Below are positions 6,884 to 17,944 of a stretch of 64,000 nucleotides of DNA, one piece after another. Numbering within the stretch: the first letter of the stretch is position 1; every line of letters starts with the position of its first letter. The notes below the pieces were generated by a model. The model was not told where the DNA came from. It did not search any database and saw nothing but the letters and a program-made list of their open reading frames with translations. The translations under genes were made by a program, and so were the position numbers. The stretch spans positions 62,001 to 126,000 of IMG/VR virus record IMGVR_UViG_3300046787_000286; one strand, given 5' to 3'.

Positions 6884-7000
6884 ATATAGAAGCACTCTCA
6901 AATGCAGGCCTAGGAGGAGTCAAGCTCTGAAACCTTTGCGTATGCATCCACTAGGGTCTCTTCTCCCGCTTTGACTTATGCTAAGAATACTTCTATATGG
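6882..7000 (-). ncRNA. stem-clamped spacer RNA A (between His CCA and Met 5' end)
   Basis: about 17-bp terminal stem CCATATAGAAGTATTCT/AGAGTGCTTCTATATGG with G-U pairs on the minus strand. Confidence 0.65.
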
Positions 7001-7073
7001 GGTGTTAGATGGGGAACGATCCCATACTATCGCTTTCACAGAGCAATGTGCAGACCACTACACTACTAACACC
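6998..7073 (-). tRNA. trnH: tRNA-His(GTG)
   Basis: loop CTGTGAA, G-1/C73, CCA. Confidence 0.9.
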
Positions 7074-7085
7074 ATAAATATTTTT

Positions 7086-7250
7086 GTGAAAACTTACTAC
7101 AGTCAAACACCAGCCGGATTAGACTTTCAATTGAGTCTAAGTGATGATGGCGTGTGTTGCATTATAGTTTACGACACTTACGATTGTGAACTTGTCATGC
7201 GCTATTTCACTAACGTCAATCGAGCTCTACGCTTTATCAACAATCTCTAA
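7086..7250 (+). CDS. small antisense-orientation hypothetical protein (54 aa)
   Basis: GTG start 5 nt after the late-promoter motif ATAAATA (7074-7080); the rest of track ORF 6978-7250 overlaps tRNA-His. Confidence 0.5.
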   Translation: MKTYYSQTPAGLDFQLSLSDDGVCCIIVYDTYDCELVMRYFTNVNRALRFINNL

Positions 7251-7252
7251 TA

Positions 7253-7381
7253 CCATATAGAAACACATTCTTGACGTAAAGGGTCTTTTCATCGCGCTGG
7301 TTAGGCTGCTTCATAGTGAGACTCAACTATTAACCAAGTTGCTCGAAGTCTACTATCAATGATGAATGCATTTCTATATGG
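7253..7381 (-). ncRNA. stem-clamped spacer RNA B
   Basis: CCATATAGAAATGCATTC/GAATGTGTTTCTATATGG terminal stem. Confidence 0.65.
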
Positions 7382-7566
7382 CATTTGTAAAGCCGGCTCA
7401 CTTTGAGCACCCTCGTCCTCCACGGACGGAGTTCTATTGTCATCATCAGTAGCATCCAACAACGCAGGGCCCATTGTTATCTTACTCTACCAACTTATCG
7501 CGTCCCTTGCTCATACCCGTCGGTAATCACTCAGGCTTTCATTTAAACTACAGCTTAACAAATACC
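7379..7566 (-). ncRNA. 188-nt structured RNA closed by a GGTATTTGTTAAGC/GCTTTACAAATGCC stem
   Basis: 14-bp terminal stem ending in ...GCCA; internal hairpins; no plausible ORF. Confidence 0.5.
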
Positions 7567-7692
7567 ATATGAAAACATTCTGTTGTGCTTGAAACAGTGA
7601 CAACCCATCTTCCTGGCAACTTTTACCTGTATAGTCGACTTCAGGGTTACTCGATGAACTCCAGTGTAGTTGTTCAGAATGTTTACATATAG
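7565..7692 (-). ncRNA. stem-clamped spacer RNA C
   Basis: CTATATGTAAACATTCTG/CAGAATGTTTTCATATGG terminal stem. Confidence 0.65.
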
Positions 7693-7792
7693 CAAGCTCA
7701 TTGTAGGCAGGGCTCGAACCTGCACACAGTCCTTACGGATAATGTCGCCCCTATAACGGGGCAATGTCTACCAATTCCATCACTACGAGCTC
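7690..7792 (-). pseudogene. Leu-type class II tRNA-like RNA with non-canonical anticodon loop and a CTA end
   Basis: D-arm GTGATGGAATTGGTAGACA, T-arm GCAGG-TTCGAGC-CCTGC, GCCCC-GTTATA-GGGGC hairpin, bulged acceptor stem. Confidence 0.6.
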
Positions 7793-7840
7793 CTGGAGTT
7801 AATTACTCTCCAGCATGGGTGTTACCTGCAGATAACACTT

Positions 7841-7949
7841 ACCATATGTAAACACACTAACGAACCTGGCTGTGGGCCGCGAACCCACTGTTTTCGCGTG
7901 GCACCAGCAAGTATTGCCACAATTACTGGTTAATGTGTTTGCATATGGT
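7841..7949 (-). ncRNA. stem-clamped spacer RNA D (after Lys CCA)
   Basis: ACCATATGCAAACACATTA/TAGTGTGTTTACATATGGT terminal stem. Confidence 0.7.
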
Positions 7950-8019
7950 AGGGCTGCGGGGTAATGATCCCCGTTCTACTGGTTAAAAGCCAGTTGCTTC
8001 ACCTTAAAGCTTCAACCCC
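7946..8019 (-). tRNA. trnK: tRNA-Lys(TTT)
   Basis: loop CTTTTAA, CCA. Confidence 0.95.
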
Positions 8020-8022
8020 ATA

Positions 8023-8098
8023 TGGTCCCTCTGGTGGGAGTCGAACCCACACGTCACGGATTAAGAGTCCGGCATGCTGCCTTAACATCTCAAAGGGA
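8023..8098 (-). tRNA. trnK: tRNA-Lys(CTT)
   Basis: loop CTCTTAA, CCA. Confidence 0.95.
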
Positions 8099-8207
8099 TG
8101 GATTGTAAAAATTGTCTTTTACGTGCCATCCCGGACCATACAGGGTACAGGGATGACACTAACGTTTACCTGAACGTTTCATATCAAAGTTTCCTTATAA
8201 AAAATTT

Positions 8208-8283
8208 TGGTGCCGAAGAATGGATTTGAACCAGTGACACACGGATTTTCAATCCGCTGCTCTACCAACTGAGCTACATCGGC
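8208..8283 (-). tRNA. trnF: tRNA-Phe(GAA)
   Basis: loop TTGAAAA, CCA. Confidence 0.95.
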
Positions 8284-8290
8284 AATTGTT

Positions 8291-8364
8291 TGGTGCTCTC
8301 ACCAGGTATCGATCCTGGGTTTCTACATTACCAATGTAGTGTAATGCCTTTATACTATGAGAGC
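8291..8364 (-). tRNA. trnT: tRNA-Thr(GGT)
   Basis: loop TTGGTAA, CCA. Confidence 0.95.
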
Positions 8365-8619
8365 TTATTCTTCGTCGACTTCTTCTGAGTCGATTACTAC
8401 AATATCTTCTGCATCGATGTCTTCTTCATCGATTTCGTCGAGTACAACTTCTGCTTCTTCAACTACAGGTGCAGCCACAGGTTTCTTAGGTCTACCCCAT
8501 GCCGAGTAACTTGCACCTTCTACTCTACCGCTTACATTCGGTTCAATTTTTTGAATAGTGCCTCCACGAGCTAAGAACTCCTGGATAGCAAGGTCGGTTG
8601 AATTGTCTCTGTTACTCAT
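8365..8619 (-). CDS. hypothetical protein with acidic C-terminal tail
   Basis: AAGGA RBS, start MSNRDNST; IQEFLARGG motif; D/E-rich tail. Confidence 0.7.
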   Translation of the reverse strand: MSNRDNSTDLAIQEFLARGGTIQKIEPNVSGRVEGASYSAWGRPKKPVAAPVVEEAEVVLDEIDEEDIDAEDIVVIDSEEVDEE

Positions 8620-8637
8620 ATGTTCCTTTAAGTTAAT

Positions 8638-8713
8638 TGGTCCGGCGTGCAGGAATCGAACCCACATTCATGAGGTAGAAGCTCATTGTACTATCCATTG
8701 TACTAACGCCAGA
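8638..8713 (-). tRNA. trnR: tRNA-Arg(TCT)
   Basis: loop CTTCTAC, CCA. Confidence 0.95.
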
Positions 8714-8715
8714 TA

Positions 8716-8816
8716 TGGTAGGAGCGGTGGGAATTGAACCCACGTTAACTGCCTTATCTAGACAGTGCTTACGGCTGTATAAGGGCCGCCCTTAGGCCAA
8801 CATTAGCAACACTCCC
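8716..8816 (-). tRNA. atypical 101-nt class II tRNA with TAT anticodon
   Basis: 7-bp acceptor stem, T-arm GTGGG-TTCAATT-CCCAC, loop CTTATAC, about 28-nt variable arm, A73, CCA. Confidence 0.7.
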
Positions 8817-8907
8817 ATTGAAAAACACACTTAGACGTAGTAGTTCTTTAGTCCACTAAGATACACGACTACCACTCGTGTCATTAGTTAAATGTGTTTA
8901 TCAATGG
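8815..8907 (-). ncRNA. stem-clamped spacer RNA E (between Glu CCA and the TAT tRNA)
   Basis: CCATTGATAAACACATTT/AAGTGTGTTTTTCAATGG terminal stem. Confidence 0.65.
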
Positions 8908-8979
8908 AGTCGCATACGGGTTACGATCCCGTCTGGTCACCTTGAAAGGGTGATGACCTCACCAGAAGTCTAATGCGAC
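8905..8979 (-). tRNA. trnE: tRNA-Glu(TTC)
   Basis: loop CTTTCAA, CCA. Confidence 0.9.
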
Positions 8980-8988
8980 ATTGTTGAA

Positions 8989-9206
8989 TTTGTAAGTAGT
9001 TGAGCCACTTTTATCTCAACTTTTTTCCTGATTATACAAGTCCGGACAGGGGGCGGCATGACACTTGGGATACTAAGTCCAGCGTGGCAACCATACTGCA
9101 CCGATCCTTTCGGATCAGCCGGGAGTCGAACCCGCTTGCCTTTTACTACACAACACCTTCGAAGAATATTGAATAGCGTGACATTCTCTTGCTGACACTT
9201 ACAAAA
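8989..9206 (-). ncRNA. about 215-nt structured RNA with an internal T-arm
   Basis: terminal TTTGTAAGT/ACTTACAAA stem; GGG-TTCGACT-CCC at 9121-9133; GATCC-GAAA-GGATC hairpin. Confidence 0.55.
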
Positions 9207-9207
9207 T

Positions 9208-9281
9208 TGGTGGAGGATAACAGAATCGAACTGTTGCGAAAACCTTGCAAAGGTCCCAGGCTACCACTACATCAATCCCCC
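9208..9281 (-). tRNA. trnA: tRNA-Ala(TGC)
   Basis: loop TTTGCAA, GGG start, CCA. Confidence 0.95.
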
Positions 9282-9292
9282 GAATTTTTTAC

Positions 9293-9367
9293 TGGAGCCT
9301 TTGTAAAGAATCGAACTTCAGTTCCCGGCTTCGTAGACCAGTGTATTATCCATTATACGACAAAGGC
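9293..9367 (-). tRNA. trnR: tRNA-Arg(ACG)
   Basis: loop CTACGAA, CCA. Confidence 0.95.
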
Positions 9368-9374
9368 AAATTGT

Positions 9375-9447
9375 TAGGCCCCGGAGGGAGGAATCGAACC
9401 TCCATTGGTTGTATACGGACCGTGTTACCATTACACTACAACCGGGA
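9375..9447 (-). pseudogene. degenerate tRNA-like element
   Basis: intact D-arm GTGTAATGGTAACAC and T-arm GGAGG-TTCGATT-CCTCC; weak anticodon arm; ends in CCTA. Confidence 0.6.
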
Positions 9448-9453
9448 TATAGG

Positions 9454-9604
9454 TTTTTGAGAGTTCCAACTATCTTTCTCAAGGACTCGCCGGGCTTGTC
9501 TCGTATGAGGGAGTTTAAACTACCTTGTGTTGCTACTGGTGTGTCAGTCTCAAGAATAGGGACCTAGCGCACAAGGGACTCAACCTCTACGTCTATCTCA
9601 AAAA
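9454..9604 (-). ncRNA. about 150-nt spacer RNA closed by TTTTTGAGA/TCTCAAAAA
   Basis: 9-bp terminal inverted repeat directly after the tRNA-Thr CCA. Confidence 0.45.
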
Positions 9605-9605
9605 T

Positions 9606-9679
9606 TGGTGCCCCATAACAGAATCGAACTGCTATCCCCGGATTACAAAACCGGTGTTCTACCATTTAACTAATGGGGC
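9606..9679 (-). tRNA. trnT: tRNA-Thr(TGT)
   Basis: loop TTTGTAA, CCA. Confidence 0.95.
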
Positions 9680-9686
9680 AAATTGT

Positions 9687-9765
9687 TGGCTCCGTGTGTG
9701 AGATTCGAACTCACCTAGTCACTGATTAACAGTCAGGTCCTTGCACCTAGCTTGGATTTCACGGA
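9687..9765 (-). tRNA. trnN: tRNA-Asn(GTT), second copy
   Basis: loop CTGTTAA, CCA. Confidence 0.9.
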
Positions 9766-9772
9766 ATAAAAT

Positions 9773-9978
9773 TGGCGTTCCTTGTAGATTTTCACTACTG
9801 CTACACTAACGAGAGCGTTACAAGTCTTCCTTATCGTGCAGCTGGTTAGGCCTATTGTCAGGAGTTACGAAGCGTTTAGTATTCAGATCTGACCTGCGAC
9901 CAAGCAGCGATGCCTGTCAACTACTACTTCACCTTGCAGAGCACTGAGAGCTCGCTGTGTCATCCTTTACGGAGGAAC
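9773..9978 (-). ncRNA. 206-nt CCA-tailed RNA with acceptor/T-arm mimic
   Basis: GTTCCT/AGGAAC stem + G + CCA; GTAG-TGAAAAT-CTAC arm immediately 5' of the acceptor strand. Confidence 0.6.
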
Positions 9979-9985
9979 ATAAAAT

Positions 9986-10060
9986 TGGCGGTCCCAGGGG
10001 GTAACGATCCCCCTCCTCAGCAGTGACAGTGCTGTGTGCGTCCATGAACACCTTGAGACC
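9986..10060 (-). tRNA. trnD: tRNA-Asp(GTC)
   Basis: loop CTGTCAC, G73, CCA. Confidence 0.95.
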
Positions 10061-10065
10061 TAAAT

Positions 10066-10138
10066 TAAGAAAAACACATTGTAAGGGGTTCTCTGGTCAC
10101 CTCTACACGCTTTTGTATACGCAATGTGTCTTATATGG
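10066..10138 (-). ncRNA. stem-clamped spacer RNA F (after Tyr CCA)
   Basis: AAGACACATTG/CAATGTGTTTT stem. Confidence 0.5.
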
Positions 10139-10220
10139 TGGAGGTGGCTGGACTTGAACCAACAATGCACAAGGGCGGCGGATTTACAGTCCACTGGGGA
10201 TACCATTTTCCTACACCTCC
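10136..10220 (-). tRNA. trnY: tRNA-Tyr(GTA)
   Basis: loop CTGTAAA, variable arm, CCA. Confidence 0.95.
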
Positions 10221-10324
10221 ATAATTCTTCTGCCGACCGGACCTGCCCCGATAATATACTAGATACGTTAAATCTAGCCTTTCTAATGATACGTGCTTTC
10301 TTCACACGAATGACGACAAATTCT

Positions 10325-10408
10325 TGGTAGGACCGACCGGAATCGAACCGGTACGCATTACGCGGCAGATTTTAAGTCTGCTGTGGCTACCTATTACACC
10401 ACGGTCCC
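10325..10408 (-). tRNA. trnL: tRNA-Leu(TAA)
   Basis: loop CTTAAAA, variable arm, CCA. Confidence 0.95.
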
Positions 10409-10501
10409 ATAAATTGTTCTGGCGGTGCGAAACCATCTGCACACTTACGCCTCTTAGCTTCTCACACCCGGGTGTTTACGCTTGGGTCATCGCCTGAAAC
10501 T

Positions 10502-10592
10502 TGGTGGACAACAATGGGAATCTAACCCACTTCTCCCTCCTATGCTATTAGGAAGTTTCAGCACAGCATCAGTGCATCACGACAGTAAGTCC
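10502..10592 (-). ncRNA. CCA-tailed tRNA-like RNA with altered T-loop
   Basis: GGAC/GTCC + A + CCA; GTGGG-TTAGATT-CCCAT arm; no recognisable anticodon arm. Confidence 0.5.
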
Positions 10593-10599
10593 ATAAACT

Positions 10600-10630
10600 T
10601 GGAAGAGCGTAGGGGAGTCGAACCCCTCTA
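10600..10630 (-). pseudogene. orphan tRNA 3' fragment (T-arm, acceptor strand, U73, CCA), Cys-like
   Basis: AGGGG-TTCGACT-CCCCT-ACGCTCT-T-CCA fused to the HNH stop codon; no matching 5' half seen nearby. Confidence 0.6.
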
Positions 10631-11065
10631 CAAGTCTTCTAAATCTTTTATACTCAAACTGGCTCGGTTAGTTTTTCCACTGCCCCAGCCAGTTTGCAAT
10701 CCTTTTAGCATATTTGCTTTTGCCTCTGGGCTAGCGTTTCTGCTACCCCATGTGTCTGTTTGTGTATGACAGTTAGGACAAAGCCAAGTCACATTGTCAA
10801 TGGTATTGTTTTTTGGATCGCCGTCGATATGTTCTAACTGGAGAACTAATTTCTTGCCATTCCAATCACTAATACCACAACAACTGCACTTATACTCTGA
10901 AAATCTCTTTAGATAAGTTTTAGCATTGCCTTTATTGGCTTTGCCACTTTCCATTATAGTTTTTATCCTATAATCTTGAGTGCATTCTCTACTACAAAAA
11001 TGCCCTGATTGTTGCGAATCAAAATACTTGTATTCTGTGTTGCAACTTTTACACAATCCAATCAT
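10628..11065 (-). CDS. HNH homing endonuclease with Zn-ribbon N-terminus
   Basis: CxxC motifs; LQLEHIDGDPKNN...LCPNCH. Confidence 0.9.
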   Translation of the reverse strand: MIGLCKSCNTEYKYFDSQQSGHFCSRECTQDYRIKTIMESGKANKGNAKTYLKRFSEYKCSCCGISDWNGKKLVLQLEHIDGDPKNNTIDNVTWLCPNCHTQTDTWGSRNASPEAKANMLKGLQTGWGSGKTNRASLSIKDLEDL

Positions 11066-11107
11066 TGGTTAGTTCTCCTTGCATTTATTTAGCAAACTAA
11101 CCAATAA

Positions 11108-11182
11108 TGGTACTCCGAAGGAGAATCGAACTCCTCTTTCCGCCTTGAAAGGGCAGCGTCCTAACCGATAGACGACCGGAGC
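11108..11182 (-). tRNA. trnE: tRNA-Glu(TTC), second copy
   Basis: loop CTTTCAA, CCA. Confidence 0.95.
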
Positions 11183-11190
11183 ATAATAAA

Positions 11191-11425
11191 CACTATACAT
11201 AAACACATTGGGATGATTGACAACAACCTATCTAGGCTAACCACGCTATCGTCTAGCGACTGGCTGTCAAACACATTACAATCCTACCTGGTCCAGCGTG
11301 ACTACTGATCAAAGCCTAAGCCGATTTCCATCTTTCATGTAACATAGCACGGCTGACACGGCTGTCAACATCGCGATGCTATTGTTACCTACTGGGGCGG
11401 TAACCCAATGCGTTTGTGTATAGTG
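11191..11425 (-). ncRNA. stem-clamped RNA G (235 nt)
   Basis: CACTATACACAAACGCATTGGG/CCCAATGTGTTTATGTATAGTG, about 22-bp terminal stem. Confidence 0.65.
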
Positions 11426-11501
11426 TCCGGAACTGAATCCGGATTCACTATACAAAAATAAATTTTTAATGAACATTAGCTAGTTGCCTAACTAAGTGTC
11501 T

Positions 11502-11670
11502 AGTATAACATGATTGCCGATACTAGTCAATTTATTTGTTGCAAGTCCTTACACTTTGTAGGGTTACTTGGTATTCAGTTAGTTGCCTAACTTCCTAACT
11601 AGCCTCTAGTATAACACTCTTTTGATAAGTGGTCTACCACAAAATATTAACCCTACGCAATGTAGGGTTA
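11502..11670 (-). promoter_or_regulatory. tandem sigma70 promoters, each preceded by a palindromic box
   Basis: TTGACT-17-TATACT (11502-11530) and TAGACC-17-TATACT (11608-11636); TAACCCTAC-N5-GTAGGGTTA at 11648-11670 and a variant at about 11544-11566. Confidence 0.7.
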
Positions 11671-11691
11671 TGTAATACTTTTGTTTGTAGA

Positions 11692-11767
11692 TGGTCTCCA
11701 TAGAAGGATTTGAACCTTCACCACATGCTCCCAAAGCATGGACGCTACCAGGTTACGCCATACGGAG
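11692..11767 (-). tRNA. trnP: tRNA-Pro(TGG)
   Basis: loop TTTGGGA, CCA. Confidence 0.95.
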
Positions 11768-11772
11768 ATAAA

Positions 11773-11994
11773 TTATTTTACTTTTGGTTCTTTTGATTTG
11801 TCAAGCTCATGTGGCTCAGCAAATCTTGTAGGTGGATGGTCAAATGTTAGCCCCATCGACTTAAACCAACCTAATGGTTTCCAGTACTTGTGTATAATGT
11901 TGTTGACTATAACTAACCCAACAATGATTACAACAAAACCCATCATTGTCAATACTGACCCGGCTAAAAATACCGCTGCTTGATCCATGTCCAT
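11773..11994 (-). CDS. small single-pass membrane protein
   Basis: hydrophobic AAVFLAGSVLTMMGFVVIIVGLVIV stretch; AAGGA RBS. Confidence 0.65.
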   Translation of the reverse strand: MDMDQAAVFLAGSVLTMMGFVVIIVGLVIVNNIIHKYWKPLGWFKSMGLTFDHPPTRFAEPHELDKSKEPKVK

Positions 11995-12009
11995 AATTTT
12001 TAAAGTCCT

Positions 12010-12086
12010 TTGGAGCGGGCAAAGAGACTCGAACTCTCGACATCTTCCTTGGCAAGGAAGTGCTCTACCAACTGAGCTATACCCGC
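12010..12086 (-). tRNA. trnG: tRNA-Gly(GCC)
   Basis: loop TTGCCAA, U73, CCA. Confidence 0.95.
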
Positions 12087-12136
12087 ATTATATTTTACTT
12101 ATTATACAACACTCTTGCTGTGTTGTAAAGACATTT

Positions 12137-12213
12137 TGGTGCCGCCACGTGAACTCGAATCACGGACCTTCCGCTTATCAAGCGGATGCTCTAACCAACT
12201 GAGCTATGGAGGC
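12137..12213 (-). tRNA. trnI: tRNA-Ile(GAT), second copy
   Basis: loop TTGATAA, CCA. Confidence 0.95.
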
Positions 12214-12218
12214 ATATT

Positions 12219-12307
12219 TGGAGGAAGGATGGTAGAATCGAACTCCAACCGCTTTCGCAGTCCATCTGTTTTCAAGACAGTGCAGGGCCCAGCCCTGATA
12301 ACCTTCC
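12219..12307 (-). tRNA. trnS: tRNA-Ser(TGA)
   Basis: loop CTTGAAA, variable arm, CCA. Confidence 0.9.
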
Positions 12308-12313
12308 ATGTTG

Positions 12314-12387
12314 TGGTCTGGGTAGGAAGAATCGAACTTCCGCATCAAGTATCCAAGACTCGGAGACTACCACTATCTTATACCCAG
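12314..12387 (-). tRNA. trnP: tRNA-Pro(TGG), second copy
   Basis: loop CTTGGAT, CCA. Confidence 0.9.
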
Positions 12388-12394
12388 ATTGTTT

Positions 12395-12469
12395 TGGTGG
12401 ACCGTAGGAGAATCGAACTCCTGCTAAAGCGTTGCAAACGCCCTGTGCTACCATTATCACTAACAGCCC
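12395..12469 (-). tRNA. trnA: tRNA-Ala(TGC), second copy
   Basis: loop TTTGCAA, G3-U70, CCA. Confidence 0.95.
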
Positions 12470-12478
12470 ATAAATTGT

Positions 12479-12552
12479 TGGCACGGGAACTAGGGATCGA
12501 ACCTAGGACGACAGAGTCAAAGTCTGTTGTGTTACCTCTACACCATTCCCGA
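12479..12552 (-). tRNA. trnQ: tRNA-Gln(TTG)
   Basis: loop CTTTGAC, CCA. Confidence 0.95.
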
Positions 12553-12908
12553 ACAAATTTTTAACGCACTGTTGCCAATGCGTGTATTAAAAAGCACAGA
12601 TGTCTATGCTCTTTAATACGCTGGGTTTTTTCACACACCACAAAAGGTGCTTCTCATCCCCCAGGCCGCCCTCATTCTAGATTTTTATAGTGACTCTACG
12701 GCTCGCGTTGCCTAACCACTGTTGCTTAACCCAAGACCGGAGTCTTGCGTCTAGCCTTAAACTGTGCTGTTGCACGTTCTAGCTTCTGAGTAATGAGCGT
12801 TTGTCTTTGCTCAGAAGTTAAAGTATGCGTCCTCAACCAATCCTTCTTATCGTTGGGTATGGATTTTACTATGTCTGTCATTAATTGTCAATTCCTACTT
12901 TAGTTTTA

Positions 12909-12947
12909 CAAAACAAAAAACCCTAGGAGTTTTAGTCCTAGGGTCCT
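12909..12947 (-). terminator. intrinsic terminator (candidate attenuator)
   Basis: ACCCTAGGA-CTAAAAC-TCCTAGGGT followed by TTTTTGTTTT. Confidence 0.75.
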
Positions 12948-12969
12948 TTAGTTTGTAAGTTACTTGCTG

Positions 12970-13119
12970 TTAAGCGTAACCTGCTCCCTCGGACCCTAAG
13001 ATAATCTCTGGTGTGCGATCATTACTATTCATTCCTGATGCAAACCATACGGCGGGGCATGTGCCCAAGCCTTTAGCCTGTGTCTGGAGTGATAACGAAT
13101 AATAATGTATGTTGTTCAT
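12970..13119 (-). CDS. 49-aa leaderless leader-peptide candidate
   Basis: MNNIHYYSLSLQTQAKGLGTCPAVWFASGMNSNDRTPEIILGSEGAGYA; ATG is 6 nt after a TATAAT box. Confidence 0.55.
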   Translation of the reverse strand: MNNIHYYSLSLQTQAKGLGTCPAVWFASGMNSNDRTPEIILGSEGAGYA

Positions 13120-13125
13120 GTTAGT

Positions 13126-13154
13126 ATTATATGTGTTTATTTATACCTTGTCAA
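13126..13154 (-). promoter_or_regulatory. overlapping sigma70 and late promoter
   Basis: TTGACA-17-TATAAT with TATAAATA inside the spacer. Confidence 0.8.
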
Positions 13155-13204
13155 CCTAGTGTTGAGCTTTTATTTAGCCTTTTGGCAAAATTAGTTTGAT
13201 TATG

Positions 13205-13387
13205 TTATGATTTTCGTCTAGAACAGTTGGGATCATTGCAAACACTAATTCTCTTGCGATCACAGTGTGGACAATCTTTTGCGATCATCCATGTTTTTAA
13301 AAACATGGGTTTTTCATTCTTACCCGGTTTATCATTGCCTGAACATTGCGTGTAAATCATAATAGCCTCCTTGGCTACTATATACAA
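13205..13387 (-). CDS. small Cys-rich (Zn-finger-like) protein
   Basis: CPHC...CNDPNC. Confidence 0.45.
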   Translation of the reverse strand: MYIVAKEAIMIYTQCSGNDKPGKNEKPMFLKTWMIAKDCPHCDRKRISVCNDPNCSRRKS

Positions 13388-13421
13388 CGCCTTGCAAGTT
13401 ACTTACGTTGACACAAAAGGT

Positions 13422-13449
13422 AAAAAAGAATGCCCGCCGAAACGGGCAT
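13422..13449 (-). terminator. intrinsic terminator after the tmRNA coding piece
   Basis: ATGCCCG-TTTCGG-CGGGCAT-TCTTTTTT. Confidence 0.85.
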
Positions 13450-13835
13450 GGTTGTTTAGGTTACAAGGTAAGTCCTACCCCGGGTGCATGGGTTATTAAG
13501 CCAATACAGCAGCACGACGAGCGATTTTTACACCGCGAGCGTTGATAGCTACTTCACCTTTTGTATTTGCGTTTGCATTTACGTTTTTTTGCGTCTACGG
13601 CCGAGTTCCCCCAACCCTACGGCTTCTGCTTTGCCGAGCTGTCCACTTGTTTACTTGTTGCCCTGTCGAAACCATGGCAGGCCCATTATAAAACACACTA
13701 TTCCGTTATCCCACGTCTAGAACGATAACTGGGGCTCCGTAGAGCTAATGTGTTTTATGGTGGACCTGGCGGGAGTCGAACCCGCGTCCAGAACACTTTT
13801 CTCTTTGCTTCTTTCCTTACGGTTTTTACAGCAAT
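13450..13835 (-). ncRNA. ssrA: circularly permuted (two-piece) tmRNA
   Basis: acceptor piece ending GCGGGTTCGACTCCCGCCAGGTCCACCA (13758-13835) precedes the coding piece starting GGGCCTGCCATGGTTTCGAC (13684); G3-U70; tag ORF ANANTKGEVAINARGVKIARRAAVLA (13496-13576); promoter TTGACT-17-TATAAT at 13842-13870. Confidence 0.9.
13683..13760 (-). ncRNA. tmRNA intervening segment, equivalent to stem-clamped spacer I
   Basis: CCATAAAACACATTA/TAGTGTGTTTTATAATGG stem. Confidence 0.7.
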
Positions 13836-13872
13836 ACAACAATTATATATGACTTCTTTTAAAAAGTCAATA

Positions 13873-13895
13873 GAAAAGCCCACCGAAGTGGGCTT
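13873..13895 (-). terminator. intrinsic terminator
   Basis: AAGCCCAC-TTCG-GTGGGCTT-TTC. Confidence 0.8.
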
Positions 13896-13915
13896 AATAG
13901 TTAATCTAGTTTAGA

Positions 13916-14464
13916 TTAGAAGCCGAAACTTAGACCTAAACCAAATGCTTTCTCTTTGATATCCTGAGCAGAACGGCTTGCATTTAAGTTAACTGCAACA
14001 TTCTTTGCGACTGGCAAAGAGTATGTTGCAAATGAAACTGTTTGCTTAGTACGTGCGCCGTCTTCAGTTGAACCTACACGAGTCTTTGCACCCAACAACA
14101 AGAAGCCTGGACCGACTGGGCGACCATAAGTTGCACCAACTAAGCCATAGTTGAAACTTGCGCCACCGTTGAAGCCATTGTCATGACCAGCACCGATGAA
14201 TGGAGTAATACCTGCGATGTTAACCTTGTTGTTAGCAACAGTAGTTTCCAAACTGTTCACAACAACGCCGTCATTAAAACGTGCGGTTCGAGATTGCAAG
14301 TTGACTTGGTAGTCACCGAAGCCTTTTCCAGCACGAATATATTGGGCTGTGCTGTCAGTTGCACCTTTGCGACCTTGTACGTTTTCAACGTCAACTGATA
14401 CAAAGTCTACTGCAAAAGCAGAGCTAGAAATGGCCAAAGCCAAGATTGCGAAGATTTTTTTCAT
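13916..14464 (-). CDS. outer-membrane beta-barrel protein
   Basis: MKK signal peptide with AFA cleavage site, alternating beta-strands, C-terminal GLSFGF (BamA signal); sigma70 promoter at 14504-14532. Confidence 0.75.
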   Translation of the reverse strand: MKKIFAILALAISSSAFAVDFVSVDVENVQGRKGATDSTAQYIRAGKGFGDYQVNLQSRTARFNDGVVVNSLETTVANNKVNIAGITPFIGAGHDNGFNGGASFNYGLVGATYGRPVGPGFLLLGAKTRVGSTEDGARTKQTVSFATYSLPVAKNVAVNLNASRSAQDIKEKAFGLGLSFGF

Positions 14465-14546
14465 GTAATTTCCTTTTAGTTAAAATGACTTGCGTCACTT
14501 TACATTATATATTCGTAGCTACGTTAAGTCAAGTAAAAACGACAAA

Positions 14547-15101
14547 TTACTTGTTGGTGTCTTCTACAGGAACCCATCCTAATTTAAAAAAGTCTTCTCG
14601 GATCTCATCTGTGACACAGCTTTCACTAACATACTTGACAATGTCCATGCCTTGCTCTAGAGCCGATGCTATCTGCTGTTCAGTAAGCTCGCCTTTAATT
14701 CCTGAGCAGTACCAATCAATGTAGTCCCCAGACTCTACCATGTCAGCAACAATACCCCCGGCATAACGCCAGGAGCAAGAGTAAGTTTGCCCTTTCAGCA
14801 GCGGCCACACATCATTCTTTTGCCAGTCTTGATTGCACAAGGCAGCATAGATATTTTGTGCATAGCTTTCACGAGACTTAGCTTTGTCGCAGATCCACTC
14901 AGTGCTACGAAGATCATATTCCAAATTGTTCTGTTGCCACTCGGGCTCGGCTTCTTTTTTCTTAACCATATCACTCCACACACGCTCCCGCTCAATGGTT
15001 TGTCGAACTTCTTCATCAGTGTTGGGATCGCGCCCTTCTGCTATTACATCGTCGATGCGACACTTGCTGTGAAAGGTACCTTTAATGGGACTTGAGTTCA
15101 T
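14547..15101 (-). CDS. hypothetical phage protein
   Basis: long ORF downstream of a tRNA and promoter. Confidence 0.7.
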   Translation of the reverse strand: MNSSPIKGTFHSKCRIDDVIAEGRDPNTDEEVRQTIERERVWSDMVKKKEAEPEWQQNNLEYDLRSTEWICDKAKSRESYAQNIYAALCNQDWQKNDVWPLLKGQTYSCSWRYAGGIVADMVESGDYIDWYCSGIKGELTEQQIASALEQGMDIVKYVSESCVTDEIREDFFKLGWVPVEDTNK

Positions 15102-15119
15102 ATAGCTAAGAAAGTTAAA

Positions 15120-15194
15120 TGGTGCGACTGGAGGATTACGATACCTCGACCCAGCGATTATGAGTCGCTTGCTCTTCCTCTGAGCTACAGTCGC
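15120..15194 (-). tRNA. trnI: tRNA-Ile2(CAT), lysidine type
   Basis: AGCGA-CTCATAA-TCGCT arm typical of Ile2; CCA; promoter at 15203-15231. Confidence 0.8.
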
Positions 15195-15227
15195 TTATGT
15201 GTATTATACAACTATCCTAGATAATTG

Positions 15228-15611
15228 TCAATTGTAATTATCTAAAAACTTTTCCAAATCGCCGTATAAGTTAACTAACACAGCTTCACGGCTGCTAAAG
15301 AAAATTAGTTTAGCGACTCTTTGTTTTTCTACTTTGATGTAGTATGGCATTTGCAGCCTACGATCTAACTCTAAAATAGTTTTTTGGTTAAATCTAGACT
15401 TTGCCGGAATGTCAAATTCGTAGAACTCTATCTCTAACTCTTTAACAAATGCATCGTACCCATGTTTGGTTAAACGCATGCCACCGTTTTCTCTAAAGTT
15501 GTACCACCAAGTTATCCTTGCTTGGTCCACAGTCCAACTACCTGGTGGCAGTTTCTCCACCAGTTGTCGGGTGAGCTCTACCTTATCGCGCACCTGGGTA
15601 GATTTGTTCAC
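15228..15611 (-). CDS. hypothetical protein
   Basis: ORF in co-directional operon. Confidence 0.7.
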   Translation of the reverse strand: MNKSTQVRDKVELTRQLVEKLPPGSWTVDQARITWWYNFRENGGMRLTKHGYDAFVKELEIEFYEFDIPAKSRFNQKTILELDRRLQMPYYIKVEKQRVAKLIFFSSREAVLVNLYGDLEKFLDNYN

Positions 15612-15879
15612 CTTGTGTTAGTAACACTACAGTGAACTTGTCTGTTTTGAATTGAGTATTCAACTTCTTGGCCAAGTTAATAGCATGCCCTGGATTAGAG
15701 AATGATACCTTCTTATACTTCGGCCCTGGATATTGCACCAAAAGATTAGAAGTTTTAAGATTGATTGGCTTGTTATCATAGAACACTGCCCATACACCCT
15801 CACTGGCTAATACCTGCTCAGATTTGTATGTTGCTTTGTCTGTTAGTTCAACAAGAACTTTTGGTTTAGGTCTACTCAT
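15583..15879 (-). CDS. hypothetical protein
   Basis: late-promoter motif ATAAATA at 15885-15891. Confidence 0.75.
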   Translation of the reverse strand: MSRPKPKVLVELTDKATYKSEQVLASEGVWAVFYDNKPINLKTSNLLVQYPGPKYKKVSFSNPGHAINLAKKLNTQFKTDKFTVVLLTQGEQIYPGAR

Positions 15880-15909
15880 AACAATATTTATCCAAGAAAA
15901 CGGCGCAGT

Positions 15910-16119
15910 TTACTTAAACGTGCCGCCTTCTATGGAAACTTGTATTATTTCTTCTGCAGGCTTTGCAGCCATCTGCTCTCGGTAACTTTGTAACTCTAAC
16001 AAAATTCTTGTGATTTCAGCTGACATTGCCTTAGCATCAGACAACGGAATGCTCATGTCTCGTAGTCCACGAGCTTCCGTACCTTGTACCCTATCGATAA
16101 ACTTTTGTAAGTGTATCAT
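15910..16119 (-). CDS. hypothetical protein
   Basis: ATGA overlap with the upstream gene. Confidence 0.7.
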   Translation of the reverse strand: MIHLQKFIDRVQGTEARGLRDMSIPLSDAKAMSAEITRILLELQSYREQMAAKPAEEIIQVSIEGGTFK

Positions 16120-16478
16120 TGCTTTCTAACAAACGGTTTAAGATCAGGTGCTACCCAGCCCAGCGGCTTGAGTACTTTACCATCTTCGCGCTTGCGTACC
16201 ATACCTGTTTCACTGTCAATTTTAGCAAAGTTAGTTTTCATAACTTCTTTCCAGGCACCTTCGGCGTCTGCGCCCATTGAATGTATAGCACCAATAGTAA
16301 CAACTAAAATGTCAATCAATGCATCCAAGTCGTCTTCCATGGTAACAGAATCTTCTAATTCCTGCACTTCTTCTTTGATAAGATTAAAATAGAGTTTATA
16401 TTGCTCTATATTTTCGCCAGCAGTGGATTGACCACATGCTTGCATAAATTTTTGTTGGTCCTTAAATGGATTGGTCAT
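16116..16478 (-). CDS. MazG-like/PRA-PH nucleotide pyrophosphohydrolase
   Basis: LIKEEVQEL...DALIDILVVTIG, NFAK, GKVLKP; start MTNPFKDQ. Confidence 0.8.
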   Translation of the reverse strand: MTNPFKDQQKFMQACGQSTAGENIEQYKLYFNLIKEEVQELEDSVTMEDDLDALIDILVVTIGAIHSMGADAEGAWKEVMKTNFAKIDSETGMVRKREDGKVLKPLGWVAPDLKPFVRKQ

Positions 16479-16914
16479 TTGCTTCTTCCTTTGTATGAAA
16501 TGGTCCATGGTATTTGTAACGCTGTAGTGCAATCAACTTTGGGTTTTGAATTGTTTTCCAATTCTTGCCTCGTTGAATAGTATACCACCCGGCAGCGAAC
16601 CATGATTTAGATTTGTTAGATTTTGTAAACAACGGTAATCGATGTTTAACGTCCCAAATTGGATTGTAAATCCTACCGGCAGTTTCGTAACCGTGTACGT
16701 CACCTACCGCAGTTTTCTTTTTTGTTTTAGGAGGCTGCTCGAACACAATATTGTGTAGTTGAGTAACCATCTTGATAGATTTGTACTGCTGAATAGTATC
16801 GTTTAAACGAACTTGAAACCCGCCACTTTGACATGCTTCGACATTGCCTATTTTTTTGTCGTCTTGTTGTAGAATCCAAAACTGTTTATCAATTACTGGT
16901 TTAGCTACGATCAT
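16462..16914 (-). CDS. hypothetical protein
   Basis: coupled to the RNase H gene. Confidence 0.7.
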   Translation of the reverse strand: MIVAKPVIDKQFWILQQDDKKIGNVEACQSGGFQVRLNDTIQQYKSIKMVTQLHNIVFEQPPKTKKKTAVGDVHGYETAGRIYNPIWDVKHRLPLFTKSNKSKSWFAAGWYTIQRGKNWKTIQNPKLIALQRYKYHGPFHTKEEANDQSI

Positions 16915-17944
16915 TTAATACTCCTTTGTATGTTTCATTCATCCAGCGACTAATTGGATCAGCAAACTCACTCAACTTGTTAAGTTCGAATTTTCCACAG
17001 AACTTGAGAAAGTGCATGCCCACTTGCCCAACATCTTTGTGGCTAATTTGCTCTAAGATTGCTGCATCTACAGTTGCTTTGATGTCGTCGGGTTGAGCTG
17101 TTAAATCAATCAAGGTTCGATTGCGTTCGTAGTCGTCGAGAACTTTGTGCTCTTGTTCATTATGATCGGTCCAGCGTTGCAACATGAGATTGTTCCAAGA
17201 ATATCCTTTCTTGTCACGATCTTCAAACGCTTCTGTAAGACCTACTCGATTCTTGCTACCTTTGATAGGAGCACCAGGGTAAGCAGAAAATACATTATCG
17301 CCAGTATCACCTCGGATACATTTCAAGAACAATGCCCATTTGTGCCAGTTTGTGGGAGCCACAAAGCTGGGATCATGTTTTTCAACTTTAATCTTGCTGT
17401 CACTCTTAACTGTAAACTTCAACGAACGACCCTTGTCATCTTCTACCCCGTTGACAGTAAACAAGTGATCGGTGATACCATTATAGAGACTGACGTTTGG
17501 TGCAACCAATTGCACAAAATCAGAATCTGAACTTACAATAACATGTTCGTCTTGAGGGTGTAAAGCAATCCAACGTGCAATGATGTCATCAGCTTCTGCT
17601 GTAGCACAGCGAATAACACTACAGTTGGTTTTTGTAGACAAGTATTTAGTCATCTCGTCATACGTTTGCCAAAACAGGGTATCTTCTTCTGCTTCTGTTT
17701 CTGTCATTGCCTGGCGTGCTACTGTGCGATTGGCTTTGTAAGGCTTGTATGCGTCTTTGCGCCAGCTACGCCCTTCCAGTGCGAAAACCATGTGATCTGC
17801 GCCAAACTTGCGAGCTACTTTGTTTGCGCTCATCATTGTAACTTGCAACGAGAACCCTAATTTAGTCCAAGTATCACTAGCACGGTGCGCTGAATGACGG
17901 GCACGAAAAAACATATTGGATGTGTCAATTAGCACATATTTCAT
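16901..17944 (-). CDS. rnh: T4-type RNase H / 5'-3' exonuclease (FEN family)
   Basis: LIDTSN, EADDII, SSDSDFVQL, GDTGDN motifs. Confidence 0.9.
   Translation of the reverse strand: MKYVLIDTSNMFFRARHSAHRASDTWTKLGFSLQVTMMSANKVARKFGADHMVFALEGRSWRKDAYKPYKANRTVARQAMTETEAEEDTLFWQTYDEMTKYLSTKTNCSVIRCATAEADDIIARWIALHPQDEHVIVSSDSDFVQLVAPNVSLYNGITDHLFTVNGVEDDKGRSLKFTVKSDSKIKVEKHDPSFVAPTNWHKWALFLKCIRGDTGDNVFSAYPGAPIKGSKNRVGLTEAFEDRDKKGYSWNNLMLQRWTDHNEQEHKVLDDYERNRTLIDLTAQPDDIKATVDAAILEQISHKDVGQVGMHFLKFCGKFELNKLSEFADPISRWMNETYKGVLNDRS

What the first reader, a model, noticed from the sequence alone, without database searches (positions are those of the whole stretch)
12909..13154. Leaderless leader peptide + terminator/antiterminator at the head of the tRNA array
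Seen: a consensus TTGACA-17-TATAAT promoter (with TATAAATA in the spacer) puts +1 at the ATG of a 49-codon ORF. CTTAGGGTCC inside the ORF (12991-13000) can pair over 10 bp with the 5' arm (GGACCCTAGG) of the downstream U-tailed terminator. Established: this is the layout of ribosome-mediated attenuators. Inference: ribosome stalling (e.g. after host anticodon nucleases deplete tRNA) frees the antiterminator and increases read-through into the tRNA genes, making a translation-stress sensor for tRNA supply. Caveat: a second promoter (TTGACA-17-TAAAAT, 12863-12891) lies just past the terminator.
Basis: partly seen in the sequence, partly recalled or inferred. Interest (0 to 1): 0.75.

Follow-up and report, generated by a model that had tools for sequence, protein, structure and literature searches.

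The report
Phage leader-peptide transcription attenuator
A short translated reading frame in a giant freshwater phage overlaps an RNA switch that can form either a transcription stop signal or a competing hairpin, and 93 related phage sequences keep it inside their tRNA gene region; this looks like a ribosome-controlled gate of a kind so far known from bacterial amino-acid operons.

Summary
On the minus strand a 12/12 promoter (13154-13126) lies 6 nt before the ATG (13119) of a 49-codon ORF. The ORF is followed by a 15-bp U-tailed terminator (12950-12914). An in-ORF box (13001-12991) pairs over 11 bp with the terminator's 5' arm; 11 of 5000 shuffles do as well.

Ninety-three distinct homologues from freshwater phage contigs all keep the ORF open (43-52 codons). 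The box:arm helix covaries as strongly as the terminator: 97% of cells paired, 6 of 8 pairs with changes on both sides, 0 of 500 shuffles as good.

The box is the base of a three-tier antiterminator hairpin, and the ORF's stop codon sits at its apex (within 6 nt in 73 of 83). A ribosome reaching the stop would therefore melt the antiterminator and let the terminator form. Slow or absent translation should give read-through. That direction is inferred, not shown.

- Only about a third of the family is leaderless.
- There is no run of regulatory codons.
- A tRNA-Met and a tmRNA lie upstream of the element.
- The gene directly downstream is a small conserved ORF, not a tRNA.
- In this clade a second promoter feeds the tRNAs independently.

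The idea of a tRNA-depletion sensor is untested. I rate this a new variant of ribosome-mediated attenuation.

The parts
13126..13154 (-). Promoter P1: TTGACA-17-TATAAT, with a conserved TAAATAA motif in the spacer.
   Evidence: 12/12 consensus match. The -35, spacer motif and -10 are conserved in relatives. The spacer motif occurs in none of the other 11 consensus-type promoters of the window and in 48 of 82 family promoters.
12970..13119 (-). Leader ORF of 49 codons. Its ATG (13119-13117) lies 6 nt after the -10 element, so the predicted mRNA is leaderless with no Shine-Dalgarno sequence. Stop TAA at 12972-12970.
   Evidence: Homologous ORFs are open in all 93 distinct relatives, at 43-52 codons. 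The ATG-to-21-mer distance takes nine different lengths, all multiples of three. No Pfam or PHROG family matches.
13020..13107 (-). Large irregular hairpin inside the ORF (RNA nt 13-100). Codons about 5-9 pair with the 5' half of the conserved 21-mer; the apical part is CCAA..GGC-loop-GCC..UUGG-like.
   Evidence: MFE folds, z = -3.16 for the ORF alone. The same architecture appears in 27 relatives. 21-mer nt 2-10 pair with the first 45 nt in 76 of 83 sequences; median z = -3.3.
13006..13026 (-). Near-invariant 21-mer AGTAATGATCGCACACCAGAG, encoding S-N-D-R-T-P-E. The 5' half is the 3' strand of the big hairpin; the 3' half is predicted to be single-stranded.
   Evidence: Invariant in five relatives that were found independently of it. 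A scan degenerate at third codon positions found only single or double synonymous variants: CGC/CGT, GAG/GAA, and once each AGC and CCC. AAT, GAT and ACA never vary.
12991..13001 (-). Box: the 5' strand of the antiterminator base helix (AT1), TCTTAGGGTCC, inside the ORF at codons 40-43.
   Evidence: Pairs over 11 bp with 12946-12936. The core 7 bp is present in 83 of 83 relatives. Covariation.
12936..13001 (-). Antiterminator hairpin in three tiers: AT1 (box with the terminator's 5' arm), AT2 (purine-rich GGAG-like stretch with CUCC-like stretch), and AT3, an apical hairpin with the stop codon UAA in its tetraloop.
   Evidence: In nascent RNA ending at the 5' arm, P(box:arm) is 0.83-1.00 in 27 of 27 sequences. 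The three-tier fold is found in 27 of 27; interior z averages -3.4. Median dG is -26.9 kcal/mol over 83 sequences, and the stop lies within 6 nt of the apex in 73 of 83.
12910..12950 (-). Intrinsic terminator: 15-bp stem (12950-12936 with 12928-12914), 7-nt loop, U-tract 12920-12910.
   Evidence: Across relatives the helix is 99.6% paired, 5 of 11 pairs show changes on both sides, and 0 of 500 shuffles do as well.
12863..12891 (-). Second promoter P2: TTGACA-17-TAAAAT. Its spacer contains the ATG of the downstream ORF.
   Evidence: 11/12 match. It is conserved only in the window's clade of five sequences. Other clades have a Shine-Dalgarno sequence plus ATG directly after the terminator and no promoter.
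12726..12881 (-). Downstream 51-codon ORF of a family with the motif ..EHTLT.EQ..LI..KLERA... It is the gene directly behind the terminator.
   Evidence: Follows the terminator, with an AAGGAG-type Shine-Dalgarno sequence, in 20 of 27 relatives. Its ATG lies 24-27 nt after the start of the 3'-arm GGG(U) core in the 15 of those that lack P2. Synonymous changes and a preserved stop are seen against L003. It belongs to clusters of hypothetical proteins in the ESM Atlas.
12553..12725 (-). Structured non-coding stretch between the downstream ORF and the first tRNA (tRNA-Gln, 12552-12479).
   Evidence: dG -59.9 kcal/mol, z = -4.56. Only one change against L003. A conserved motif recurs in relatives. 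No Rfam match.

Best explanation
This is a conserved, phage-borne, ribosome-dependent transcription attenuator.

How it is built. Host RNA polymerase starts at the consensus promoter P1. The first ~150 nt encode a short peptide (49 codons here). In this clade the mRNA is predicted to be leaderless. The last ~10 codons and the stop codon form the 5' half of a three-tier antiterminator hairpin. The base of that hairpin (the box, 13001-12991) pairs with the 5' arm of the downstream intrinsic terminator.

How it most likely works. If no ribosome has reached the box when the 5' arm emerges, the antiterminator forms and holds that arm. Polymerase then reads through into the conserved small ORF, the structured non-coding RNA and the tRNAs. 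If a ribosome follows the polymerase closely and translates to the stop codon at the hairpin apex, it unwinds the whole 5' half of the antiterminator. The terminator then forms and a ~205-nt RNA is released. Read-through would thus rise when translation of the leader is slow, stalled or not started.

Shown: the promoter, ORF, terminator and alternative pairing exist and are under selection. Inferred: the transcription start at the ATG, actual translation of the ORF, and the direction of control. Speculative: that the physiological signal is tRNA supply.
For: 1. Anatomy at the stated coordinates. Eleven contiguous pairs between the box and the 5' arm; 11 of 5000 shuffles match this.

2. The ORF is maintained. 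It is open in 93 of 93 distinct homologues despite about 50% sequence divergence. Indels preserve the frame, giving nine ATG-to-21-mer lengths that are all multiples of three. The other two frames are closed early. Some clades have a 50-63-nt leader with an upstream AGGA instead of a leaderless start, yet keep the ORF.

3. The antiterminator base helix covaries. On the anchored table (83 sequences) position -1 is GC 63, AT 17, GU 2, with one mismatch. CG to UA arose independently in two clades (L080, L094). In those cases the box changed with the 5' arm while the 3' arm did not need to change. L092 changed two pairs. On the model-based alignment 97% of cells pair against 89.6% in shuffles (0 of 500 as high). 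Six of eight pairs show changes on both sides, and slid controls reach 60% at most. The terminator helix has equal support.

4. Predicted P(box:arm) in nascent RNA is 0.83-1.00 in 27 of 27 sequences. The box-to-arm segment folds into the same three-tier hairpin in 27 of 27, although the interior sequences differ; interior z averages -3.4.

5. The stop codon lies between box and arm in every sequence, and within 6 nt of the apical loop centre in 73 of 83. In the window it is the first three nt of the apical tetraloop.

6. In clades without P2 the terminator is followed directly by the Shine-Dalgarno sequence and ATG of the next gene. There is no promoter in between, so that gene depends on read-through.

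7. The element always lies in the 5' part of a phage tRNA cluster.
Against: - No experimental transcription start, translation or termination data exist. The metatranscriptome contigs were too fragmentary to help.
- There is no run of codons for one amino acid, as classical attenuators have. The conserved codons are common ones.
- No convincing anti-antiterminator (1:2) helix was found. RNAalifold proposes only 4 bp, GAUC with GGUC.
- The amino-acid constraint (pN/pS 0.3-0.7) matches that of the neighbouring small gene. It therefore cannot separate a leader peptide from a functional small protein.
- In the window's clade P2 can feed the tRNAs without read-through.
- With the terminal U-tract largely left out, the folding model often prefers the antiterminator even in full-length RNA. 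Efficient termination may therefore need more than a passing ribosome.
Confidence: 0.6

Rival explanations
1. This is an ordinary small-protein gene of about 45 aa, with the motif ..P-x-Y-W..SNDRTPE.., and its own promoter and terminator. The peptide is the functional product. The box:arm pairing would serve something other than termination control, such as mRNA stability or control of translation termination.
For: The ORF is conserved in 93 of 93 homologues with a recognisable motif. pN/pS of 0.3-0.7 is like that of the neighbouring real small gene. The unit is a compact promoter-ORF-terminator module.
Against: The reading frame over the box differs between clades (LGSE versus G-x-G-V-x-E) while the nucleotides stay the same. 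The box covaries with the terminator's 5' arm, a pairing that excludes the terminator. The stop codon is pinned to the hairpin apex. Synonymous sites of the conserved heptad are frozen. The Atlas language-model recognition score is low and no family matches. A functional peptide and an attenuator are not mutually exclusive.
Confidence: 0.12
2. This is mainly a structured small RNA, the ~205-nt terminated transcript. Its invariant single-stranded CGCACACCAGAG would act in trans on a host or phage target, as the Sinorhizobium attenuator RNA rnTrpL does. Under this reading the ORF is secondary.
For: A consensus promoter plus a strong terminator should yield an abundant short RNA. The fold is strong, z = -6.55. 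The 21-mer is conserved at the nucleotide level beyond what coding requires. A precedent exists for an attenuator RNA acting in trans (PMC6614838, listed).
Against: The ORF is kept open with frame-preserving indels in every homologue, which a pure non-coding RNA would not need. No complementary target with two or fewer mismatches exists in the phage genome. The host is unknown, so host targets cannot be tested. This could be an added function rather than a rival.
Confidence: 0.12
3. This is a factor-dependent antitermination switch of the riboswitch, T-box or protein-binding type. The big 5' hairpin plus the 21-mer would be the sensor for a protein, a tRNA or a small molecule that decides between antiterminator and terminator. 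Translation would be irrelevant.
For: A large conserved hairpin and an invariant 21-mer precede the expression platform. The 21-mer contains ACCA, which resembles a tRNA 3' end (sequence reading only). The element sits within a tRNA cluster.
Against: No Rfam family, T-box included, matches even at E up to 10. There is no UGGN bulge in the antiterminator (reading of the folds). The ORF and the apex position of its stop are conserved, which such a switch would not require.
Confidence: 0.1
4. The complementarity arose by chance next to an ordinary terminator.
For: Short complementarities are common.
Against: 11 of 5000 shuffles match it in the window alone. It is conserved, with compensatory changes, across 83 complete homologues.
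Confidence: 0.01

Closest known systems
Leader-peptide (ribosome-mediated) attenuators of enterobacterial amino-acid operons: trpL, hisL, pheL, thrL, leuL, ilv leaders (Rfam Trp_leader, His_leader and others)
   Same: A short ORF lies between a promoter and an intrinsic terminator. An antiterminator helix shares one strand with the terminator. The ORF overlaps the antiterminator's 5' strand. Geometry predicts that a ribosome reaching the end of the ORF favours termination and a lagging ribosome favours read-through.
   Different: - No tandem regulatory codons for one amino acid.
- No clear 1:2 anti-antiterminator, so the untranslated default is predicted to be read-through rather than super-attenuation.
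- The stop codon sits at the apex of a three-tier antiterminator.
- The start is leaderless in about a third of members.
- The setting is a phage genome in front of a small ORF, a non-coding RNA and tRNAs, not biosynthetic genes.
- No sequence or model match to the Rfam leader families.
pyrBI and pyrE attenuators of E. coli (control by transcription-translation coupling)
   Same: The outcome depends on how closely the leading ribosome follows RNA polymerase, not on charging of one tRNA. This fits an element that has no regulatory codon run.
   Different: In pyrBI a closely following ribosome prevents terminator formation, so tight coupling gives read-through. Here the geometry predicts the opposite sign, because the ribosome melts an antiterminator.
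rnTrpL of Sinorhizobium meliloti, an attenuator RNA that also acts as a trans sRNA (PMC6614838)
   Same: A terminated leader transcript that is itself a stable, structured RNA encoding a leader peptide. A dual role is conceivable here.
   Different: No trans target is known or was found here. There is no sequence relation.
Phage antitermination systems: lambda N/nut, Q/qut, HK022 put RNA
   Same: Phage-encoded control of read-through at intrinsic terminators.
   Different: Those systems modify RNA polymerase through a protein or an RNA element. They do not use an alternative hairpin that competes for the terminator's arm, nor a translated leader.

Membership tests
Ribosome-mediated (leader-peptide) transcription attenuator | A short ORF in the transcript between the promoter and the terminator, maintained by selection. 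| tested here: met
   49 codons in the window. The ORF is open in 93 of 93 distinct homologues, with frame-preserving indels.
Ribosome-mediated (leader-peptide) transcription attenuator | An intrinsic terminator downstream of the ORF and upstream of the regulated genes. | tested here: met
   15-bp stem plus U-tract. The helix is 99.6% paired and covaries. In the 15 of 27 relatives that have the downstream gene but no second promoter, its ATG starts 24-27 nt after the start of the 3'-arm core.
Ribosome-mediated (leader-peptide) transcription attenuator | An antiterminator pairing that excludes the terminator, supported by covariation. | tested here: met
   A 7-12-bp box:5'-arm helix in 83 of 83 sequences. 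Six of eight pairs show changes on both sides, 0 of 500 shuffles do as well, and the events are independent on a tree.
Ribosome-mediated (leader-peptide) transcription attenuator | The ORF overlaps the antiterminator, so that ribosome position decides which structure forms. | tested here: met
   The box lies inside the ORF in all sequences. The stop lies between box and arm in all, and at the hairpin apex (within 6 nt) in 73 of 83. This shows the geometry only; the functional dependence was not tested.
Ribosome-mediated (leader-peptide) transcription attenuator | A run of regulatory codons cognate to the regulated pathway. | tested here: not met
   No tandem codons. The conserved heptad holds seven different codons, all common in the phage.
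Ribosome-mediated (leader-peptide) transcription attenuator | An upstream pause or anti-antiterminator (1:2) hairpin. | tested here: inconclusive
   A large conserved hairpin ends in the 21-mer and could act as a pause hairpin. Pairing of the 21-mer with the box is only 4 bp in the consensus and cannot covary, because the 21-mer is invariant.
Ribosome-mediated (leader-peptide) transcription attenuator | Read-through depends on translation of the leader. | not testable with these tools
   This needs reporter or in vitro coupled assays. The metatranscriptome contigs were uninformative.
Leaderless mRNA | The transcription start coincides with the A of the start codon, with no Shine-Dalgarno sequence. 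| tested here: inconclusive
   The window has 6 nt between the -10 element and the ATG and no Shine-Dalgarno sequence. In 27 of 83 relatives the distance is 10 nt or less; in 46 of 83 it is 50-63 nt. No start-site mapping is available.
Rfam leader, riboswitch or T-box families | A match to a curated covariance model. | tested here: not met
   There is no match at gathering thresholds over 1-17000. Over 12450-13450 the only sub-threshold hits touching the element were two weak, far-below-gathering chance matches on the terminator hairpin (NsiR1 and a plant microRNA family). No leader, riboswitch or T-box family matched even at E up to 10.

The most novel reading that the evidence does not exclude
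The element is a translation-capacity gate specific to giant phages. Transcripts started at P1 carry a 5'-terminal AUG, are translated, and are mostly terminated, yielding a ~205-nt RNA. Two kinds of transcript would fold the antiterminator by default and read through: those whose leader is not translated in time because ribosomes or tRNAs are limiting, and those arriving from upstream promoters, where the AUG is internal and has no Shine-Dalgarno sequence. Both would continue into the small ORF, the structured RNA and the tRNA genes. The frozen codons AGU AAU GAU CGY just upstream of the box would be the sensing site. This would be the first translation-sensing attenuator known to govern a virus's own translation-supply genes.
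Probability: 0.25. Interest if true: 0.85.

Novelty: new variant of a known kind. Interest (0 to 1): 0.7.

Why it matters
Leader-peptide attenuation is a textbook mechanism tied to bacterial amino-acid and pyrimidine operons. In two full-text literature searches I found no report of it in front of a phage tRNA cluster.

Phage tRNA sets are now discussed as a counter-measure to host tRNA-cleaving defences (PMC10264068, PMC11464382, PMC11555353, listed). How their expression is regulated is largely unknown.

This element gives a concrete cis-regulatory unit with simple predictions that can be tested in a surrogate host. At least 93 natural variants already serve as a mutational series. It also provides a natural case in which leaderless and leadered versions of the same regulatory ORF can be compared.

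Tried and rejected
- Close and distant DNA searches of deposited phage genomes found nothing. All relatives had to come from IMG/VR and metagenome contigs.
- Rfam at gathering thresholds and at E up to 10 gave no family for the element. The only sub-threshold hits on it were two weak, far-below-gathering chance matches on the terminator hairpin.
- Pfam, PHROGs and the ESM Atlas gave no family for the leader peptide.
- Metatranscriptome contigs matched mainly conserved tRNA, tmRNA and terminator pieces of relatives. They gave no usable 5' or 3' ends.
- pN/pS did not separate the leader from the neighbouring small gene.
- MAFFT misaligned the box in several rows. I therefore anchored the pairing by motif in a script and re-aligned the sequences with a covariance model. 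That alignment leans towards the structure. The anchored table and the slid controls agree with it.
- A classical 1:2 anti-antiterminator was looked for and found weak.
- I read the 21-mer by eye for the elemental pause consensus (G at -10, pyrimidine at -1, G at +1) and found no fit.
- No complement of the 21-mer occurs in the phage genome.
- The only bacterial-genome hit to the 21-mer (Algoriella, L106) lacks the ATG, box and terminator, and is a chance match.
- The conserved codons are not rare codons.

Full report
**1. What is in the window**

All features are on the minus strand.

- A 12/12 sigma-70-type promoter, TTGACA (13154-13149), 17 nt, TATAAT (13131-13126), lies 6 nt before an ATG (13119-13117).
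- A 49-codon ORF runs to TAA at 12972-12970.
- Nineteen nt later a 15-bp stem (12950-12936 with 12928-12914), a 7-nt loop and the tail TTTTTTGTTTTG make a strong intrinsic-terminator-like site.
- TCTTAGGGTCC (13001-12991, codons 40-43) pairs over 11 contiguous positions, one of them G-U, with the terminator's 5' arm (12946-12936). Only 11 of 5000 dinucleotide-preserving shuffles of the upstream 169 nt reach this.
- The RNA from +1 to the terminator folds far better than shuffles (-72.2 kcal/mol, z = -6.55). The ORF part alone also does (z = -3.16).

**2. Context**

- The window is part of a 214-kb IMG/VR viral record estimated to be 62% complete. It encodes phage proteins such as a family-B DNA polymerase.
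- The window holds about 31 tRNA genes on the minus strand.
- The element is not strictly at the head of this region. A tRNA-Met (15194-15120) and a permuted tmRNA (13812-13528, Rfam RF04321, 91 bits) lie upstream, each with its own consensus promoter.
- Downstream of the terminator come, in order:
  - P2;
  - a 51-codon ORF (12881-12726);
  - about 170 nt of structured non-coding sequence (12725-12553, z = -4.56);
  - tRNA-Gln (12552), the first tRNA of the continuous array.

**3. Relatives**

- Deposited phage genomes gave no match.
- IMG/VR contigs were found through neighbouring proteins.
- An alignment of the first five relatives showed an invariant 21-mer, AGTAATGATCGCACACCAGAG.
- Further members came from an exact scan for that 21-mer and from a scan degenerate at third codon positions.
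- A metagenome scan brought the total to 93 distinct homologues, 83 of them complete.
- The single bacterial-genome hit is a chance match.
- Sequencing runs that hold the window's sequence are labelled freshwater, lake-water, riverine or wetland metagenomes. The longest related viral contigs are 339-374 kb.
- The element always lies in the 5' part of a tRNA cluster, with one or two tRNAs (Met, Leu) upstream.
- It occurs once in the window's own genome.

**4. The ORF is real**

- It is open in every homologue, at 43-52 codons from the conserved ATG. The other two frames close early.
- The distance from the ATG to the 21-mer takes nine different values between 72 and 96 nt, all multiples of three.
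- Members with a 50-63-nt leader and an upstream AGGA still keep the ORF.
- The peptide sequence is only loosely conserved outside ..YW.. and SNDRTPE. pN/pS is 0.3-0.7, the same range as the neighbouring small gene, so this measure does not discriminate.
- Synonymous divergence is lower in the leader than in the neighbouring gene.
- The seven conserved codons are almost frozen at their third positions. AAU, GAU and ACA never vary in 83 sequences, although AAC and GAC make up 44-52% of the phage's own usage.
- This points to RNA-level constraint on top of coding. Indeed, the reading frame across the box differs between clades while the nucleotides stay the same.

**5. The alternative pairing is real**

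- Anchored on the motifs, the box and the terminator's 5' arm form a 7-bp core helix in 83 of 83 sequences. The helix reaches 11 bp in the window and 12 bp in L080 and L094.
- Pair types by position (83 sequences):

| Position | Pair types |
|---|---|
| -1 | GC 63, AU 17, GU 2, one mismatch |
| 1 | GC 82, AU 1 |
| 4 | CG 80, UA 3 |
| 5 | CG 78, UA 1, UG 1, CA 3 |

- A tree was built without the box and terminator columns. On it, CG to UA at position 4 arose twice (L080, L094), and L092 changed two pairs.
- In the position-4 cases the 3' arm of the terminator did not need to change, because a G-U pair became A-U. The box therefore tracked the 5' arm itself and was not merely copying the 3' arm.
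- On a covariance-model alignment 97% of cells pair, against 89.6% in shuffles (0 of 500 as high). Six of eight pairs show changes on both sides. Sliding the partner by one column drops pairing to 60%.
- The terminator helix scores alike: 99.6% paired, 5 of 11 pairs with changes on both sides, 0 of 500 shuffles.

**6. The antiterminator is a three-tier hairpin with the stop codon at its apex**

- Folding each sequence from box to 5' arm gives the same architecture in 27 of 27:
  - AT1: box with arm.
  - AT2: a purine-rich GGAG-like stretch with a CUCC-like stretch.
  - AT3: an apical hairpin whose sequence differs between clades.
- The interior is more stable than shuffled interiors (mean z = -3.4; 24 of 27 below -2). 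Median dG over 83 sequences is -26.9 kcal/mol.
- In nascent RNA ending at the 5' arm, P(box:arm) is 0.83-1.00 in all 27 sequences.
- The ORF's stop codon lies between box and arm in every sequence, and within 6 nt of the apical-loop centre in 73 of 83 (median -2.5). In the window UAA is the first three nt of the apical tetraloop.
- The stop is UAA in 79 of 83 and never UGA. A GGAG-type motif ends 5-8 nt before the last sense codon in 71 of 83.

**7. The mechanism this implies**

- A ribosome translating to the stop unwinds the 5' strands of AT1, AT2 and AT3. That frees the 5' arm to form the terminator.
- Without a ribosome at that place and time, the antiterminator forms first and polymerase reads through. 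This direction is inferred from geometry.
- It resembles the logic of the trp leader, where a lagging ribosome gives read-through. Two things are missing: a demonstrable 1:2 helix (only 4 bp in the consensus) and a run of regulatory codons.
- The untranslated default should therefore be read-through. A start-codon mutant would separate this model from a trp-type one.
- The large hairpin inside the ORF has its 3' strand in the invariant 21-mer. The 21-mer pairs with the first 45 nt in 76 of 83 sequences.
- The role of this hairpin and of the following single-stranded CGCACACCAGAG is unexplained. Possibilities include:
  - a pause hairpin that synchronises ribosome and polymerase;
  - a sensing site, since a ribosome stalled at AGU AAU GAU CGY would leave the box free;
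  - a seed for trans action.

  None of these could be tested here.

**8. What is regulated**

- In 20 of 27 relatives the terminator is followed by an AAGGAG-type Shine-Dalgarno sequence and the ATG of a conserved 51-54-codon ORF. In the 15 of those that lack P2 there is no promoter in between, and the ATG lies 24-27 nt after the start of the 3'-arm core.
- In two relatives (L081, L092) the structured non-coding motif follows directly.
- In the window's clade P2 has been added, and its spacer contains that ORF's ATG. P2 transcripts therefore cannot express the small ORF but can express the tRNAs.
- So in this genome the attenuator most directly controls the small ORF and adds to tRNA transcription. 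In other clades it gates everything up to the next promoter.

**9. Leaderless start**

- By spacing, the window's +1 falls at the A of the ATG, and there is no Shine-Dalgarno sequence.
- Among 83 relatives the distance from the -10 element to the ATG is 10 nt or less in 27, 20-42 nt in 9, and 50-63 nt in 46. One relative had no recognisable promoter.
- Leaderless initiation is therefore a feature of some clades, not a defining one, and it has not been confirmed experimentally.
- The promoter's spacer motif TAAATAA is found only in this promoter within the window and recurs in 48 of 82 family promoters. It is unexplained.

**10. Comparison and verdict**

- No Rfam, Pfam or PHROG family matches.
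- Two full-text literature searches found no phage tRNA-cluster attenuator.
- The element meets four structural criteria of a ribosome-mediated attenuator. It fails the regulatory-codon-run criterion and is inconclusive for the 1:2 hairpin. Dependence on translation cannot be tested here.
- I file it as a new variant of a known kind.

Confidence, by claim:

| Claim | Confidence |
|---|---|
| ORF plus alternative antiterminator and terminator are real and selected | about 0.9 |
| Translation of the ORF sets the choice, in the stated direction | about 0.6 |
| The element senses tRNA depletion caused by host nucleases | about 0.15 |

Noticed in passing
window 13528-13812 (-), promoter 13870-13842, terminator 13449-13430: A phage-encoded permuted (two-piece) tmRNA: Rfam RF04321, 91 bits, E = 8e-17. 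It has its own consensus-like promoter and terminator. ARAGORN also calls permuted tmRNAs in relatives L073 and L080.
   Followed up: partly
window 12553-12725 (-): A highly conserved, strongly structured non-coding stretch (z = -4.56) lies between the small ORF and tRNA-Gln. The motif GAGGGCGGC-N5-GGATGAGAAG recurs in the window's clade and in L081, where it follows the terminator directly; a variant follows the terminator in L092. There is no Rfam match. It may be an unknown RNA that is part of the regulated unit.
   Followed up: partly
window 13132-13148 (-), spacer of P1: The spacer motif TAAATAA is conserved in 48 of 82 family promoters and absent from the other 11 consensus-type promoters of the window. 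It may be a regulator site or a promoter-specific feature.
   Followed up: partly
window 12973-12990 (-), and homologues: A Shine-Dalgarno-like GGAG(G)/GGGA motif follows the box in 82 of 83 sequences. It ends 5-8 nt before the last sense codon in 71. The stop is UAA in 79 of 83 and never UGA, and the last sense codon is GUG in 35 of 83. This might hold the terminating ribosome at the hairpin apex.
   Followed up: partly
L099:7753-8013: A natural deletion variant. The sequence from the box to the terminator's 5' arm is missing, fusing the box to the 3' arm. The whole antiterminator is lost but a short hairpin and U-tract remain. An assembly artefact is not excluded.
   Followed up: no
L093, about 80 nt after its terminator: A 130-aa ORF with CxxC...HH...CxxCH motifs, resembling an HNH homing endonuclease, replaces the usual small downstream ORF.
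   Followed up: no
window 224-312, 7699-7789, 8719-8816, 9379-9445 (-): ARAGORN calls two tRNA-like genes with abnormal anticodon loops (2-nt 'anticodons'). Rfam calls two further tRNA matches (38.5 and 32.8 bits) that ARAGORN does not report. These may be degenerate, intron-bearing or unusual tRNAs.
   Followed up: no
window 13205-13360 (-) and 13916-14464 (-): A 51-aa ORF with two CxxC pairs and an AGGAGG Shine-Dalgarno sequence lies just upstream of P1. A 182-aa protein with a signal peptide and no family match is conserved at 57-87% identity in more than 25 large phage contigs.
   Followed up: no
window 12916-12948; run X18: A metatranscriptome contig from a relative covers the terminator hairpin and continues on one side into an AGGAA-ATGATGACAGA start resembling the downstream small ORF. 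This hints at read-through RNA, but DNA carry-over is not excluded.
   Followed up: partly
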